DNA of 64,000 bases from assembly GCA_033442325.1 (NCBI GenBank), contig JAWQFM010000024.1, positions 862,027 to 926,026 of the forward strand, given 5' to 3'. The DNA comes from Salpingoeca rosetta (Eukaryota > Protista > Choanoflagellata). Position numbers and translations under genes: made by a program. The number at the start of each line of letters is the position of its first letter. Positions within the stretch are counted from its first letter, which is position 1. This document shows positions 2,789 through 13,528 of the stretch, piece after piece. The notes under the pieces were generated by a model. The model saw only the letters and a list, made by a program, of their open reading frames with translations. It did not search any database and was not told the origin of the DNA.

Positions 2789-3350
2789 GGCTCGTGAAGA
2801 AAAAGAAAAAAGAAAAAAAAAGAAGAAAAAAAAAAAGGGCAAACACGCGACGGCTGCACGTCGCCACAACAAACCTCATGCCACTACAGTACACTTTACG
2901 GCACGTCCTTCAAACACATGGCAAGGACACTGGTCCAACCTTGGTCGATGCAAGCAATGCTCAGCTGGCCGTCATCCTCCTTCACGCGCCCTTGCACCTG
3001 CCGCAGCCATGCACATGTGCACACGCAATGAACGACCCACCAAGCACGACAGACAGCACATCTCACTTGTTGTGTGTCGAAACACATTCACCATCTTCCA
3101 ACCTCCCTCATTTTCTTCATGAATCTCTCAACAGATACCGCTGCAACCAAGCACGCCCCCAATCGCACACACACAGACACACAGACACACACAGACACAC
3201 ACAGACACACACACACACACGCTGCTTACCATGATATTTTCCATGTTTCCAAAGTTTGTCCAAATGAAAGGACCACCACTCCCCCACTCGTGCCGCAGCA
3301 AATTCGGGCCTGCACATGTGATTGGAGTGTATGAGAGGTAGATCGATGAC

Positions 3351-3388
<38 letters not shown>

Positions 3389-4372
3389 GAGTGTGCGTGT
3401 GTATGTGTGCGCGCGTGTCAATTCGCTGGTTTGGTGGTTGGTTCGTTGGCTCAAGATTGAGTGGAAGCGAATGTTGAAATGTGCGTGTGTGCGTTCTGTG
3501 GTGGAGTACGCAGACAGACAGACAGACCCGCGCACAGACACAGACAGACAGATACAGACACGCCACGATGTTTGGTGGCTGCAATGTCACCTGAGCTTTC
3601 TGCGAGAACCTTCATTGCGCATGCGGGCAGCGGGTAGCCCTTCACCAGCTCCATAAACACCAGGCCCTGTCGCGCGGTGTTGGTGTTGTTCGGTGAGTGA
3701 ACGAAGGCGTTTGTGCAGAGGTGGCGAGCGGGCTGCAGAGACAGCATGACAAAAGACAGACAGAAGAACAAGGTGCACAGACACAGACACAGACACAGAC
3801 AAAGACACACACCGACACACACGGACACAGACACAGACACAGACACAGACACAGACACAGACACAGACACAGACACACACGAATCCGGACCTGGATGCGG
3901 TGGTTGCGGAGGCGTTGGGTGTGCTCCTGTTTTCCGTTTGCAAATCGCATCGCGCGCAGAACATCCTGCCGGCGCGAGGGGAAGAGGTGAAGATGGTGGA
4001 AGGGTGAGGGTGGAAGCGGTGGGTGTGGGCATTTGGTGGCACATCCAATGGTTGGAGCCAACGCACAGCACGGAAAAAGGAATGAAAGGCACGGAAAAAG
4101 GAATGAAAGGCACGGGAAAAAGGAAACGTTACAAGACACCCACACACTCAGACACACTCAGACACACCATACACACCCAGACACACCCAGACACACACAC
4201 GTACACACGCACGCGCGCGCACAGCACCTCTTGGTCAGCGCATGCGAGTGTGCGAATGTTGGGGCAGCGGATGCCGAGTTGCTTTGCCAGGAGCGTGGCG
4301 AAGATCTCGCCCGCCGTCTCCGTGCCCGTCGGTTTCGCAACGACCCATCCTGAGGCACGCGCATTGGTGGTG

Positions 4373-9593: not shown

Positions 9594-9805
9594 ACCGGCC
9601 TGATGTGGCGTGTGCTTGTGTTTGTTTGTGTCGCTCTGTGTGCATGCAGCTCAGCTGTCCACGCTTGCGTTCCAGCTGACATGCCATGTAAGCAACATGA
9701 CACAAGGCCTCCCTGCTCGCGCGTGCTTGAGTCAAGCTCTTCCTCCAACATCAATTACATGTCACACCACGTGTCCCAGTGTCCCGTCACCCACCCTTTC
9801 TTCTC

Positions 9806-9870
<65 letters not shown>

Positions 9871-9894
9871 GCTGTTGTTGTTGTTGTTGTTGTT
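9806..9894. repeat. (TTG)n microsatellite, intergenic/3' UTR
   Basis: Direct inspection. Confidence 0.95.
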
Positions 9895-10304
9895 CTTCTA
9901 CTACTACTACTGCTGGCCACATTCAATCACTCTCAATGAATAATTTGACCGTCTCGTCTTGCGTGGCTGCATGGGCTGTGCGTCGTGCCAGAGGAGAGTA
10001 CAGCAGTTGGCGCACGACATGAGAGCATGCACATGAAAACATACACGCTCAGCCTGCATCACACATCATCATCATCGTCAGCACCACACATACACTGCGG
10101 TGGATCGTGTGATGCGCACGTGCTTTTCTGTGGAAAACATTCGATAATATTCGGCAATCGGACGAGTCCAGCTGGGCGTGCTTTTTTCCTTCTTCCTCCA
10201 AGCAAGCCCTTCTTTGCATCTTGCTGCACACTTTCCACGCGCCTGTGCCTCGTGTTGCATCTCCTTCTGTCTCTCTCTCGCGCAACAACAACAACACACC
10301 AGCC

Positions 10305-12495
10305 ATGCCCACCGTGAGTGATGAGTTGGGAGAGAGGGTTAGGGACCCGTGTGGGGAAGCTGTGTCGATCGCGTCGACCGTGCTGTTGGGCTGCATGTTT
10401 GGTGGTGGTTCAGTACGTGTTGGCTGCAAACAGTGGCGTGCTTGTGTTTGTTGTTTGAAGAGTTGGCGCGCCTGTCATCACAAGCAAAGGAGTGGTGCGC
10501 AAACCACGATCATCACTGACGCACGAGCTACCAACACCACTACTGCCCAACACCACTGGTCTCAACCACCACCATTCGCCACCACCGGTCTCCACCACCA
10601 CTGCTCACCACCACCACTGTTCATTACCATTGGTGTCCACCACCCCCTGCTCACCACATCCCCCCTCCCAAACACGTTTCTGACTCCTCGCCTCCTTCTC
10701 TCCGTTTCTATTTGTTCGTGTGTAGGTTTCCGGCTACCTGACCAAGCTCGGCTACAAGTCCGGCAAGTGGCAGTCCAGGTTCTTTGTGCTGGACGACACT
10801 GCGCTGCGCTACTACACGGAGCAGAACGGCCAGCTTAAGGGCGAGATTCTCGTGAGCACCATCACCTCCGCAGAGGCTGTCAAGCCCGGCTGCCAGGTCG
10901 CCCCCGATGCCAGCACCACGGCCCCCAAGAAGCCCGTGGGCCCCTTCTGCCTGAAGATCACCACCCAGGTCAAGGGCACCCGCACCTTCTACTTCCTCGC
11001 CTCCTCCAAGGAGGAGCAGCTCAAGTGGATCAAGGCCCTCCTTCCCAACAAGGAGGACGGCAAGGGCGACCGCCCGTCCTGCCCCTACGCCACCAGCATC
11101 AACGGCGCCCCGCTCGCTGACCCGCAGTACGCCCTGCGCGCCGGCGTCCGCGGCCCGCTCCTCCTCCAGGACTGGCAGCTCGTCGAGAAGCACACGCAGT
11201 TCAACCGCGAGCGCATCCCCGAGCGCATTGTGCACGCCAAGGGCTCCGGTGCATTCGGCACCTTCACCGTGACGCAGGACCTGAGCAAGTTCACCAAGGC
11301 CAAGTTCCTGAACGAGGTTGGCAAGAAGACCGAGGTCTTCATCCGCTTCTCCACCGTCGCCGGTGAGCTTGGCGCCGCCGATGCCGAGCGCGACGTGCGC
11401 GGCGTCGCCATGAAGTTCTACACGGAGGAGGGCAACTGGGACCTTGTCGGCAACAACACCCCCGTCTTCTTCATCCGTGACCCATCCCTCTTCCCGGACT
11501 TTATCCACACGCAGAAGCGCGACCCCCGCACCAACATGCGCAGCAACGAGGCCGCGTGGAAGTTCTGGTCCGAGCACCCAGAGTCGCTGCACCAGGTGAC
11601 CATCCTCATGTCCGACCGCGGCATCCCCACGGGCTACCGCTTCATGAACGCCTACGGCAGCCACACCTACAGCTTCATCAACAAGGACGACGAGCGCTTC
11701 TACGTCAAGTTCCACTTCAAGACCCAGCAGGGCCACAAGCACTACACCAACGCCGAGGCCGCCAAGGTTGTCGGCGGCGACCGCGAGAGCTCCCAGCGCG
11801 ACCTCTACGAGGCCATTGAGCTCGGCGACTTCCCCCGCTGGAAGTGCTACGTCCAGGTCATGACCGAGGACGAGGCCGGCGCGTGCCCCTTTGACCCCTT
11901 TGACCTCACCAAGGTGTGGCCCCACTCCATGTACCCGCTGCACGAGCTCGGCTTCCTCGAGCTCAACCGCAACCCGGACAACTACTTTGCCGAGGTTGAG
12001 CAGGCCGCGTTTGCGCCCAAGAACACCGTCCCCGGCCTGGGCCACAGCCCAGACCCCATGCTGCAGATGCGCATCTTCTCCTACATGGATGCCCAGAACT
12101 ACCGCCTCGGCATCAACCACAACCAGCTGCCCGTCAACCGCGCCCGCTGCCCCATCTTCTGCCCGCAGTACCGCTCCGGCCACATGTCCCTCGGCGAGAT
12201 CAAGGACGCCAACTTCAACCCCGATGCCAAGGTCAACAGCATGCTTGAGCCGCCACTGAAGCTCGAGGGCGACGCCTTCCGCCCCGTCCCAAAGAACCCG
12301 GACGACTACACCCAGCCCGGCAACCTCTTCCGCCTGTTTGACCAGGACCAGCGCAACCGCCTCTTCAACAACATTGCCGACGCCATGGAGGGCGTGTCCA
12401 AGGAGGTCATGGAGAAGCAGATTGAGCACTTCTCCCGCTGCGACCCTGCGTATGGGGCAGGCGTGCGCGATGCCATCCAGCGCCGCAGCAAGTAA
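10305..12495 (+). CDS. cat: PH domain-monofunctional heme catalase (clade 3) fusion, ~592 aa; exon 1 10305-10313 (MPT), exon 2 10726-12495
   Basis: ATG CCC ACC|gtgagt ... tgtag|GTT TCC GGC TAC is in frame with the 10786..12495 ORF. PH motifs: [21 protein letters not shown]...LRYY...KGEI...FCLKITT...[20 protein letters not shown]. Catalase motifs: [15 protein letters not shown] (distal His codon 11233-11235), [28 protein letters not shown] (proximal Tyr codon 12082-12084). Strong GC3 codon bias. Confidence 0.96.
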
Positions 12496-13528
12496 ACCCG
12501 GCACCTGCTTGCTACTCCTCATCCACCATCCGTCACACCACCACAACCCACCACCACAACCAGAACCAAACACACCCGTCAACATCAAGTGCCAGCGACA
12601 CCACTGCGCGCAAGATGCGAAAAATCAACCAAACAGCCCGACACCGTGCGTGTCTTGCTGTTTGGCATTTGTCTTTCGCTGTGATCTTGTCGTCTTTTGT
12701 TTTTGTCTCGTTTTTCTTTGTTGTTGATTGGGTTGGTTTGCAATTGTTTGCTGGTGGCGTGTAGCGTACCAGCCCCCCCCCCCGGACGTTGTTGCTTTTT
12801 GGATGTTGTTTCTCTCTTGTTCTCTGCTCCAATTTGCCAATGACGCTTGCTTGTCCCCCCCCCCCCTTTGCTTTTACCCCTTTCTCTTCTGCTCCCTTCT
12901 CCTGTGTTCCCCTCCTGCTGCATAACTGGTCCCGCGTGCTGTGTTGTGTCTCTTCGATAAGTACACACGATTCTCCACGCAACTGCGTCAGCCAACCCAA
13001 CAGCACAGCACATTGCCGCCAGTGTCAAAGTATGCAACGCGTGGCTGTTGTTTGGTTATGTACATTCATTGATCCCACTTCGTTGTGTTGGAACGAGAAG
13101 ACGAGTAAGACTGTCATGCGGGGGTGGGGGTGTGGTTGTGGCTTTGCTGGCGGTTGTTGGCGATGAGCAGGATTGAATTGGTTGTTTGATTGCTTGCTTG
13201 CTGGCGTGCACGTTCGATCCAGCAATGACATGACATGACGTGACATGACAGAAGTCTCTCTCATTGACAAACGCACGTGTCAAAGAGTGAAAGAAGGAGC
13301 AAAGGGAAGAGGTGCATCTTCGTCTGTGCCAAAATACAGATGATGACTGTCCTTGGGTGTGCGTGTGTGGCTGTGGTGGGTGTGGTATGCACAGGAACAA
13401 GAGTTGCAGCACGAAGTGCCGCAGCGTCAAAACCACGACAACAAAACAAAAACCGAGCCATTAAACCACACGCAACAGTAACTCGTGTTGGTGACACACA
13501 CAATGACCAGCGGCACCTATTGATTGCC

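What the first reader, a model, noticed from the sequence alone, without database searches (positions are those of the whole stretch)
11080..12495. The catalase moiety looks bacterial and is intronless: likely horizontal transfer domesticated by fusion
Seen: 1770 nt of coding sequence has no intron, while neighbouring genes mostly have 50-250 nt exons. Codon usage is extremely C/G-ending, consistent with host adaptation and high expression. Segments [46 protein letters not shown] and [12 protein letters not shown]...RLFNNIA...[16 protein letters not shown] resemble bacterial clade 3 KatA (Proteus/Bacteroides/Bacillus type) more than animal catalase (DPDYGIRDLF) as I remember them. Inference: a prey-derived catalase was inserted behind a host PH exon. 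Retroposition is an alternative explanation for the lack of introns.
Basis: partly seen in the sequence, partly recalled or inferred. Interest (0 to 1): 0.75.

Follow-up and report, generated by a model that had tools for sequence, protein, structure and literature searches.

The report
Bacterial-origin catalase fused to PH domain
The only catalase gene of the choanoflagellate Salpingoeca rosetta descends from a bacterial KatA-type gene that became a normal host gene and was fused to a host-type PH domain; a 2021 screen had already flagged it as foreign but never analysed it.

Summary
Observation confirmed; interpretation largely supported. Window 10305-12495 (+) is S. rosetta PTSG_08456 (592 aa). 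It has a 3-codon exon 1, a 412-nt GT..AG intron spliced in RNA reads, and one 1770-nt exon encoding a PH domain, a short linker and a complete small-subunit catalase.

- **Similarity:** the catalase part is 58-65% identical to bacterial KatA-type catalases and 43-47% identical to animal and yeast ones.
- **Tree:** in a careful ML tree it sits inside a clade of 34 prokaryotic sequences (100/100). Forcing it together with animal, fungal and amoebozoan catalases is rejected (p-AU 0.001).
- **Diagnostic sites:** it has the prokaryotic residue at 22 of 23 diagnostic columns and lacks two eukaryote-type single-residue insertions.
- **Other catalases:** none was detected in the genome, and the protein has no PTS1.
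- **Distribution:** the same fusion occurs in Microstomoeca roanoka and in two unnamed eukaryotic contigs.
- **Host features:** codon use matches host actin and tubulin genes. The PH domain has a host paralogue.

Caveats:
- The donor is unresolved and "prey-derived" is untested.
- PH and catalase share one exon, so "inserted behind a PH exon" is not literal.
- Intron poverty is not diagnostic, because host actin and tubulin genes are also intron-free over their coding domains.
- Matriano et al. 2021 (Table S1) listed this gene as FOREIGN (alien index 402) but filtered it out.
- This scan's first readers also noted the same stretch in other notes.

The parts
10247..10304 (+). 5' untranslated leader; the transcript start near 10247 is approximate
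   Evidence: Stranded RNA reads: molecule ends cluster at 10247 and there is low depth over 10170-10303.
10305..10313 (+). Exon 1 coding part: ATG plus 2 codons (Met-Pro-Thr)
   Evidence: Read from the sequence. The spliced product equals the 592-aa NCBI protein P0001 at 100% identity.
10314..10725 (+). Spliceosomal intron, 412 nt, GT..AG, phase 0
   Evidence: 25 RNA reads from 16 start positions join 10313 to 10726. DNA-run contigs retain the intron (table 8).
10729..11040 (+). PH domain of eukaryotic type
   Evidence: Pfam PF00169 scores 60 bits, E 3e-16, on exon 2 residues 2-105. The AlphaFold model shows 7 strands and a C-terminal helix with pLDDT 71-91. A host paralogue lies at C14:1533340-1533888.
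11041..11073 (+). Linker between the PH domain and the first residues that align to bacterial catalases
   Evidence: This stretch has no counterpart in bacterial catalases in alignment A1. Residues 112-136 have pLDDT below 50.
11074..12492 (+). Complete small-subunit clade-3 (KatA-type) catalase of bacterial ancestry. Pfam Catalase spans 11092-12222 and Catalase-rel spans 12295-12477.
   Evidence: Searches give 58-65% identity to prokaryotic catalases from query residue 1-8 onward. Both catalase signature motifs are present.
12493..12495 (+). Stop codon. The C-terminus reads ...RRSK, which is not a PTS1.
12496..12976 (+). 3' untranslated region; the end near 12976 is approximate
   Evidence: RNA depth of 169-635 continues to about 12983, and molecule ends cluster at 12976.

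Best explanation
A bacterial katA-type gene (monofunctional heme catalase, small subunit, clade 3) was transferred into an ancestor of the Salpingoeca rosetta / Microstomoeca roanoka lineage. Almost the whole bacterial reading frame was kept. It now lies in frame behind a eukaryote-type PH domain and a linker of about 11 residues, all within one exon. The gene has a host 5' end: a short first exon and a spliceosomal intron. It also has a host-like 3' UTR and the C-ending codon preference of highly expressed host genes. It is transcribed and spliced, and both parts evolve under purifying selection. It is the only catalase detectable in the genome, so it appears to have replaced the ancestral opisthokont-type enzyme.

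Inferred, not shown: the product is an active catalase tetramer that removes H2O2. Because it has no PTS1 and carries PH domains, it probably works in the cytosol or at phosphoinositide-bearing membranes rather than in peroxisomes.
For: **Identity of the gene**
- The spliced product is 100% identical to NCBI 'catalase [Salpingoeca rosetta]', 592 aa.
- It is PTSG_08456 / EGD77363.

**Similarity**
- After three other PH-catalase fusions, every one of the remaining 116 top hits is a stand-alone protein of 474-546 aa. All but one are 61-65% identical, and every named one is bacterial.
- 80 loci from named prokaryotic genomes across many phyla are 57-65% identical.
- An animal catalase is 47% identical.

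**Careful ML tree** (LG+C20+F+G4 PMSF, 55 rows)
- The PH-catalases are monophyletic (100/100).
- PH-catalases plus 34 prokaryotic rows form one clade (100/100, branch length 0.92).
- Animals, Ogataea and two amoebozoan rows form a separate clade (100/96).
- Prokaryotes excluding the PH-catalases form one clade in 0 of 200 bootstrap trees, so the PH-catalases are nested, not sister.
- A 91-row quick tree gives the same picture.

**Tests and diagnostic characters**
- AU test: holding the PH-catalases with the eukaryote-type clade costs 59.3 lnL, p-AU 0.0011.
- At 22 of 23 columns fixed differently in the two groups, the PH-catalases carry the prokaryotic residue. They lack two single-residue insertions of the eukaryote type.
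- Unnamed sequences in or next to this part of the tree lie in bacterial gene neighbourhoods.

**Integration and expression**
- The neighbours are eukaryotic genes (nucleoplasmin-like, myosin, kinase-RCC1) on a 1.19-Mb scaffold.
- The intron is spliced in 25 reads, and strand-specific depth is 24-635 over exon 2.

**Host adaptation**
- RSCU correlation is 0.91 with host actin and tubulin genes, against at most 0.87 with any of the 80 prokaryotic relatives.
- CTC, TCC and CCC are preferred as in the host, not CTG, TCG and CCG as in the GC-rich relative L003.

**Selection**
- dN/dS is about 0.2-0.4 in both parts.

**No second catalase**
- The Pfam model and an animal catalase each hit only this locus in the 55-Mb genome.
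- The same exon-level method does find a 50-residue ACOX exon.

**Published screen**
- Alien index 402, designation FOREIGN, best nr hit Kerstersia gyiorum at 62.8% (PMC7971027 Table S1).
Against: - The donor lineage is not resolved. The sister relation to Verticiella plus a metagenomic sequence has only 83/60 support.
- Named non-animal holozoan catalases (Monosiga brevicollis, Capsaspora) could not be brought into the tree. 'Replacement of an ancestral gene' therefore rests on the animal, fungal and amoebozoan clade and on absence in this genome.
- Eukaryote sampling is thin: 9 animal rows, 1 fungus and 2 amoebozoan transcriptome sequences that may be contaminants.
- The PH-catalase stem is long (0.68), so some long-branch effect cannot be excluded. 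The mixture model and the AU test argue against it.
- The window and the NCBI scaffold are the same assembly, with identical N gaps. Linkage to the flanking genes is therefore not independently confirmed beyond a 2.9-kb DNA contig.
- Enzyme activity, tetramer formation, lipid binding and localisation are untested.
Confidence: 0.88

Rival explanations
1. Vertical descent. A KatA-like catalase was already present in early eukaryotes or holozoans, was lost almost everywhere, and survives only in this choanoflagellate subclade.
For: Richter-type orthogroups place the S. rosetta catalase in a family with the last common ancestor 'Ureukaryote'. Eukaryote sampling in my trees is limited.
Against: - The PH-catalases are nested within prokaryotic diversity in all 200 bootstrap trees.
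- The AU test rejects union with eukaryote-type catalases.
- Apart from the four PH-catalase fusions, none of the top 120 word-search hits is a named eukaryote or comes from a eukaryote-only source.
- This scenario needs many independent losses.
Confidence: 0.04
2. Indirect route. The gene is bacterial in ultimate origin but reached the choanoflagellates through another eukaryote (eukaryote-to-eukaryote transfer).
For: Two of the four PH-catalase sequences come from unnamed eukaryote-like contigs. Other marine flagellates have acquired bacterial catalases (PMC7237987).
Against: No non-fused eukaryotic intermediate appears among the best hits. All four eukaryotic sequences share the PH fusion and form one clade (100/100). 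That fits a single entry followed by vertical descent.
Confidence: 0.06
3. Bacterial contamination or an assembly chimera rather than a host gene.
For: S. rosetta cultures contain bacteria (my knowledge). The window is the same assembly as the NCBI scaffold.
Against: - The reading frame is continuous with a PH domain.
- A GT..AG intron is spliced in RNA.
- Codon usage is that of the host.
- 20 runs from 8 studies hold at least part of the stretch, 18 of them half its words or more.
- An orthologous fusion exists in the Microstomoeca transcriptome.
Confidence: 0.01
4. The lack of introns in the 1770-nt exon reflects intron loss or retroposition typical of highly expressed host genes, not bacterial ancestry. 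This rival concerns the reader's intron argument only and is compatible with the transfer.
For: - Host actin genes match the full Pfam domain in single open frames, and host tubulins lie in open frames of 462-507 aa, about the full protein length. Their GC3 is 0.78-0.89.
- The PH part lacks the intron that its paralogue on C14 has after '...KWQSR'.
- 8.8% of S. rosetta genes lack introns, and candidate transferred genes have the same median of 5 introns as other genes.
Against: A bacterial gene arrives without introns, so no loss is needed for the catalase part. Neither route can be told apart from the sequence.
Confidence: 0.3

Closest known systems
Bacterial clade-3 small-subunit catalases (KatA type, e.g. 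the Pseudomonas aeruginosa, Proteus mirabilis and Helicobacter pylori enzymes with solved structures)
   Same: - The Catalase and Catalase-rel domains match over their full length.
- Identity is 58-65%.
- The active-site and heme-ligand motifs are the same.
- The subunit size is about 475 residues.
- The gene sits inside this group in ML trees.
   Different: - It is encoded in a eukaryotic chromosome with a spliceosomal intron.
- It is fused at the N-terminus to a PH domain.
- It has a deletion of about 8 residues and a 1-residue insertion in the C-terminal part relative to the bacterial sequences.
- The stem branch is long (0.68).
Animal and fungal peroxisomal catalases (clade 3, opisthokont type)
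   Same: Same enzyme family and fold, and the same catalytic residues. Identity is 43-47%.
   Different: - It forms a separate clade (100/96).
- It differs at 22 of 23 diagnostic columns.
- It lacks the two single-residue insertions of the eukaryote type.
- It has no C-terminal PTS1.
Bacterial catalases acquired by other protists (Diplonema papillatum from an alphaproteobacterium; Leishmaniinae; Blastocrithidia), PMC7237987
   Same: The same kind of event: a heterotrophic flagellate acquires, or functionally replaces its catalase with, a bacterial catalase.
   Different: It is a different host lineage, a close relative of animals. Here the enzyme is fused to a PH domain. No such fusion was found in the literature search.
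S. rosetta alien-index candidates of Matriano, Alegado and Conaco 2021 (PMC7971027)
   Same: This very gene is in their Table S1 with alien index 402.4, designation FOREIGN, 1 intron and GC3 0.926.
   Different: Its orthogroup was dated 'Ureukaryote', the class that the paper's filter excluded from the final 175 candidates. The word catalase does not occur in the main text, and I found no tree for it.

Membership tests
Monofunctional heme catalase, small-subunit clade 3 (KatA type) | Full-length catalase core domain plus the catalase-related C-terminal domain | tested here: met
   PF00199 scores 598.7 bits over model positions 1-378 of 383. PF06628 scores 76.9 bits.
Monofunctional heme catalase, small-subunit clade 3 (KatA type) | Catalytic His and Asn and the proximal Tyr heme ligand in their conserved motifs | tested here: met
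   The active-site motif at residue 162 (with His173) and the heme-ligand motif at residue 452 (with Tyr456) are present in all PH-catalases. The patterns were recalled from PROSITE PS00438 and PS00437. Asn246/247, Arg452 and Tyr456 are invariant in the 7-sequence alignment; His173 is invariant there and nearly invariant in the 42-sequence alignment.
Monofunctional heme catalase, small-subunit clade 3 (KatA type) | Small subunit without the C-terminal flavodoxin-like domain of clade 2 | tested here: met
   The catalase part is 474 residues and ends 18 nt (6 codons) after the Catalase-rel domain.
Monofunctional heme catalase, small-subunit clade 3 (KatA type) | Placement inside the bacterial KatA-like clade in a phylogeny | tested here: met
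   The clade of 34 prokaryotic rows plus 4 PH-catalases has 100/100 support. It has 98 SH-aLRT support in the 91-row tree.
Monofunctional heme catalase, small-subunit clade 3 (KatA type) | Heme binding and H2O2 dismutation activity | not testable with these tools
   This needs recombinant protein or a cell extract assay.
Opisthokont peroxisomal catalase | Groups with animal and fungal catalases | tested here: not met
   It lies in a separate clade. The AU test rejects the union, p 0.0011.
Opisthokont peroxisomal catalase | C-terminal peroxisomal targeting signal (PTS1-like tripeptide) | tested here: not met
   The C-termini are -RSK, -QSN, -AAQ and -KRQ in the four PH-catalases and are not conserved. 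The PTS1 consensus is from my knowledge.
Opisthokont peroxisomal catalase | Lineage-specific residues and single-residue insertions | tested here: not met
   It shares 1 of 23 diagnostic residues and lacks both insertions.
Bacterium-to-eukaryote horizontal gene transfer | The recipient sequence is nested within donor-domain diversity with support | tested here: met
   Prokaryotes form a clade without the PH-catalases in 0 of 200 bootstrap trees.
Bacterium-to-eukaryote horizontal gene transfer | Physical integration in the host genome, with host gene features and expression | tested here: met
   Eukaryotic neighbours, a spliced intron and stranded transcription, and host codon usage. Caveat: only one assembly is available.
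Bacterium-to-eukaryote horizontal gene transfer | Restricted distribution among relatives of the recipient | tested here: inconclusive
   Only S. rosetta, Microstomoeca roanoka and two unnamed sequences carry it among the best hits. Other choanoflagellate catalases could not be retrieved for comparison.
PH domain (PF00169) | Sequence match above the Pfam threshold and a PH fold (seven-stranded sandwich capped by a C-terminal helix) | tested here: met
   60.1 bits against a cut-off of 25.1. The model has 7 strands plus helix 98-108 with pLDDT 71-91.
PH domain (PF00169) | Phosphoinositide binding | not testable with these tools
   Basic residues lie in the strand 1-2 region (K...KSGKWQSR), but I could not match the classical 3-phosphoinositide motif as I recall it. 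A lipid-binding assay is needed.

The most novel reading that the evidence does not exclude
The S. rosetta lineage lost the ancestral peroxisomal catalase and now relies solely on a bacterium-derived catalase. A tetramer of this enzyme would carry four PH domains and dock on phosphoinositide-rich membranes (plasma membrane, phagosome or collar) to remove H2O2 locally. Its peroxisomes contain acyl-CoA oxidase and would be left without catalase. That would be a new way of placing an antioxidant enzyme, in a close relative of animals.
Probability: 0.3. Interest if true: 0.6.

Novelty: new member of a known kind. Interest (0 to 1): 0.4.

Why it matters
Catalases have moved from bacteria into protists several times, so the event itself is of a known kind. 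This gene had also already been scored as foreign in a published supplementary table.

What this analysis adds:
- It gives the phylogenetic proof.
- It shows that this is the sole catalase of a widely used model for animal origins.
- It shows that the gene lacks a peroxisomal signal.
- It shows that the transferred frame was joined to a host-type PH domain before S. rosetta and Microstomoeca diverged.

Consequences:
- Using choanoflagellate catalases as outgroups for animal catalase evolution needs care. The S. rosetta gene is not an orthologue.
- The gene offers a tractable case of how a transferred enzyme is re-targeted by domain fusion.

Tried and rejected
- **91-row careful tree.** The search did not finish after 680 s. 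Only its quick version is used. The careful result comes from a 55-row subset with long-branch rows removed.
- **Monosiga brevicollis catalase.** I could not obtain it or any other named non-animal holozoan catalase. The profile search returned almost only animals. Papers mention an M. brevicollis catalase used as an outgroup but do not state its type.
- **Amoebozoan sequences.** The two amoebozoan transcriptome sequences nest among animal catalases in the 91-row quick tree but lie just outside the nine animal rows in the 55-row trees, and may be contaminants. They were kept but carry little weight.
- **Pex3 search.** The Pex3 Pfam search of the genome was blank, but its control was blank too, so it says nothing.
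- **GC3 as an argument.** High GC3 alone was rejected as evidence of host adaptation, because GC-rich bacterial relatives reach 0.93 as well. Codon-by-codon comparison was used instead. The host figures were partly taken on the wrong strand and were corrected.
- **Independent assembly.** Confirmation from a second assembly was rejected because the NCBI scaffold and the window share the same N gaps.
- **Literature.** A search for a PH-catalase fusion found nothing relevant.
- **Earlier scan notes.** They contain no second catalase in this genome.
- **Handling of the spliced model.**
  - All database searches used exon 2 by reference, or the database protein P0001 that a tool returned.
  - Exon 1 is only 3 codons and was not searched.
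  - In one search a local script concatenated the 9 nt of exon 1 with exon 2 in memory, only to count substitutions against two orthologous contigs.
Full report
**What is there**

Window 10305-12495 on the + strand is one gene.
- Exon 1 carries ATG plus two codons (10305-10313).
- A 412-nt intron with GT..AG ends follows (10314-10725).
- A single 1770-nt exon (10726-12495) holds the rest.

The spliced product is 100% identical to the 592-aa NCBI protein 'catalase [Salpingoeca rosetta]'. This is PTSG_08456 / EGD77363 / F2UJR4. The window is part of scaffold GL832977.1 of assembly GCA_000188695.1, with the same N gaps.

Pfam finds three domains:
- a PH domain (60 bits on exon 2 alone);
- a full-length Catalase domain (E 6e-180);
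- a Catalase-rel domain.

An AlphaFold model shows a folded PH module (residues 1-110, pLDDT 71-91). A low-confidence stretch (112-136) covers the linker and the start of the catalase part, and the catalase core follows.

**Check of the observation**

- The gene as a whole is not intronless. It has one 5' intron, and PH and catalase share one exon.
- Stranded RNA reads cover exon 2 at depth 24-635.
- 25 reads from 16 start positions join 10313 to 10726.
- Transcript ends lie near 10247 and 12976.
- DNA-run contigs carry the intron and both flanks over 9921-12784.

**Is the catalase bacterial?**

By similarity, yes.
- The best solved structures are bacterial KatA-type enzymes (570-612 bits). 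Mammalian chains score 480-483 bits and yeast chains 420-432 bits.
- In the word search, three other PH-catalase fusions come first. All 116 further listed hits are stand-alone proteins of 474-546 aa. All but one are 61-65% identical, and every named one is bacterial.
- A scan of one genome per prokaryotic species gave 80 loci at 57-65% identity. They span Alpha-, Beta- and Gammaproteobacteria, Acidobacteriota, Ignavibacteriota, Bacteroidota, Bacillota, Desulfobacterota and others.

To obtain eukaryotic sequences I searched the 50%-identity representatives. I then ran a profile of the eukaryote-like representatives. This returned named animal catalases. Cluster look-ups named Ogataea and several animals.

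The trees and tests agree.
- Careful ML tree (LG+C20+F+G4 by PMSF, 55 rows, 481 columns):
  - the four PH-catalases form a clade (100/100);
  - PH-catalases plus 34 prokaryotic rows form a clade (100/100, branch 0.92);
  - animals, Ogataea and two amoebozoan rows form another clade (100/96);
  - the prokaryotes form a clade without the PH-catalases in none of 200 bootstrap trees, so the eukaryotic sequences are nested, not sister.
- A 91-row quick tree that keeps the long-branch rows agrees (98 and 95 SH-aLRT on the relevant branches).
- Holding the PH-catalases together with the eukaryote-type clade lowers the log-likelihood by 59.3, p-AU 0.0011.
- Independently of tree building, 23 columns are fixed differently (at least 90%) in the two groups. 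The PH-catalases carry the prokaryotic residue at 22 of them. They lack two single-residue insertions that mark the eukaryote type and are also absent from the outgroup.
- Unnamed sequences in or next to the prokaryotic clade lie in dense bacterial neighbourhoods: a LysR regulator, ABC transporters, OsmC and a group II intron reverse transcriptase.

**Is it a host gene?**

- Its neighbours are eukaryotic, intron-rich genes: nucleoplasmin-like, myosin and kinase-RCC1.
- Codon choice matches host actin and tubulin genes (RSCU r = 0.91) better than any of the 80 prokaryotic relatives (at most 0.87). The host's C-ending preferences CTC, TCC and CCC are used, not the G-ending ones of the GC-rich relative L003.
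- The PH part and the catalase part have the same bias (GC3 0.92 and 0.93).
- dN/dS against two orthologous contigs is about 0.2-0.4 in both parts.
- The stretch is held by 20 sequencing runs from 8 studies, 18 of them with half its words or more.

**The PH domain**

- The domain has a paralogue in the same genome, at C14:1533340-1533888.
- That gene also starts with Met followed directly by the PH domain.
- It shares 16 of 18 residues (89%) and 44 of 54 nt in the first strand region.
- It has an intron right after '...KWQSR' that the catalase gene lacks.
- The PH part is therefore of host type.
- Bacterial homology begins 1-8 residues into the 474-aa segment. Essentially the whole bacterial frame was kept behind a linker of about 11 residues.

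**Distribution and age**

- The same fusion is present in Microstomoeca roanoka (84% identity, EukProt).
- It is also in an ENA assembly (P0003/P0405, 83%) and in a Logan contig (P0004, 70%).
- The last two are single-gene contigs of about 1.9 kb with short leaders, and GC3 of 0.89 and 0.69.
- The fusion therefore predates the split of these taxa.
- No stand-alone eukaryotic intermediate was seen.

**No other catalase**

- The Pfam model and an animal catalase each hit only this locus in the 55.4-Mb genome.
- The same exon-level search finds a 50-residue exon of acyl-CoA oxidase and Pex19 fragments. A split canonical catalase should therefore have been seen.
- The four PH-catalases end in -RSK, -QSN, -AAQ and -KRQ. 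There is no conserved PTS1.

**What is not supported**

- 'Prey-derived' is untested. The donor cannot be named: the nearest relation has 83/60 support. Bacteroidota catalases, the phylum of the usual laboratory prey (my knowledge), fall in the other bacterial subclade.
- Intron poverty is not a mark of transfer in this genome:
  - host actin genes match the whole Pfam domain in one open frame, and host tubulins lie in open frames of about full protein length;
  - 8.8% of S. rosetta genes have no intron;
  - published candidate transferred genes have the genome's median of 5 introns.

**Prior knowledge**

- Matriano, Alegado and Conaco 2021 (PMC7971027) list this gene in Table S1. The entry gives alien index 402.4, designation FOREIGN, best hit Kerstersia gyiorum catalase at 62.8%, Pfam PF00199;PF06628;PF00169, 1 intron and GC3 0.926.
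- Its orthogroup was dated 'Ureukaryote', the class that the paper's filter excluded from the final 175 candidates. The word catalase does not occur in the main text, and I found no tree for it.
- Bacterial catalases in Diplonema and trypanosomatids are precedents (PMC7237987).
- No paper describing a PH-catalase fusion was found.
- This scan's first readers noted the same stretch four times. Those notes were not used as evidence.

**Mechanism and verdict**

Shown:
- bacterial ancestry of the catalase part;
- integration in the host chromosome, splicing and expression;
- host codon usage and purifying selection;
- a host-type PH domain in the same exon;
- this is the sole detectable catalase, and it lacks a PTS1.

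Inferred:
- an active tetrameric heme catalase;
- PH-mediated placement at membranes or in the cytosol rather than in peroxisomes;
- replacement of an ancestral opisthokont-type enzyme.

This is a solid, moderately interesting case of a known kind of event. It was partly anticipated in a published supplementary table.

- Searches used exon 2 by reference, or the database protein returned by a tool.
- A local script joined the 9 nt of exon 1 to exon 2 only for codon counting.

Noticed in passing
G000 C14:1533340-1533888 (-), loci L084/L087: A small host gene that starts with Met directly followed by a PH domain closely resembling the one fused to the catalase (16 of 18 residues identical at the start). 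It has an intron after '...KWQSR' and a Gln-rich tail. It is the likely source family of the fused PH domain.
   Followed up: partly
G000 C2:2719593-2720711, C13:1337218-1338336, C3:227422-228540 (actin); C13:56246, C11:546926, C7:1748297 (tubulin): Actin genes match the whole Pfam domain in one open frame, tubulins lie in open frames of 462-507 aa, and GC3 is 0.85-0.89. Highly expressed host genes therefore look intron-poor and C-ending, like the catalase gene.
   Followed up: partly
window 10678 (inside the intron): Contigs of two other runs (X7, X17) carry a 9-nt insertion (CCTTCTGCC) relative to the reference. This is a strain or culture polymorphism.
   Followed up: no
window 9624: All 151 RNA reads and the contigs of two runs read A where the reference has G. 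This is either a reference error or a fixed difference in the upstream gene's transcript.
   Followed up: no
window 9795-9920 and 12770-12855: A long Cys/Val-coding trinucleotide repeat lies upstream and a G-run lies in the 3' UTR. Contigs of public runs break at both, and reads show 1-2-nt length variation at 12773 and 12855.
   Followed up: no
run X19 (organism B, RNA-Seq 2021), window 10789-10975: A 187-nt contig identical to the PH-coding part occurs in an RNA library labelled as another organism. It is probably carry-over from S. rosetta material rather than a relative.
   Followed up: no
proteins P0141, P0152, P0153, P0241: Other catalases in the representative library carry large extra parts: N-terminal extensions of 172, 288 and 188 residues, and one 3560-residue protein with the catalase at 3066-3521. 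Their origin and partner domains were not examined.
   Followed up: no
proteins P0366 (Paradermamoeba levis), P0384 (Stenamoeba stenopodia), P0348 (Siedleckia nematoides): EukProt transcriptome catalases of two amoebae and an apicomplexan are 69-74% identical to an animal-type catalase representative (P0125). The two amoebae nest among animals in the 91-row quick tree but lie just outside them in the 55-row trees. They may be contaminants from animal material.
   Followed up: no
G000 C2:1463851-1464006 (-) and C2:1480570-1480725 (+): Two identical-scoring Pex19 matches lie in opposite orientation 16.6 kb apart, each with one in-frame TAG. This suggests an inverted duplication, or an intron read through.
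   Followed up: no
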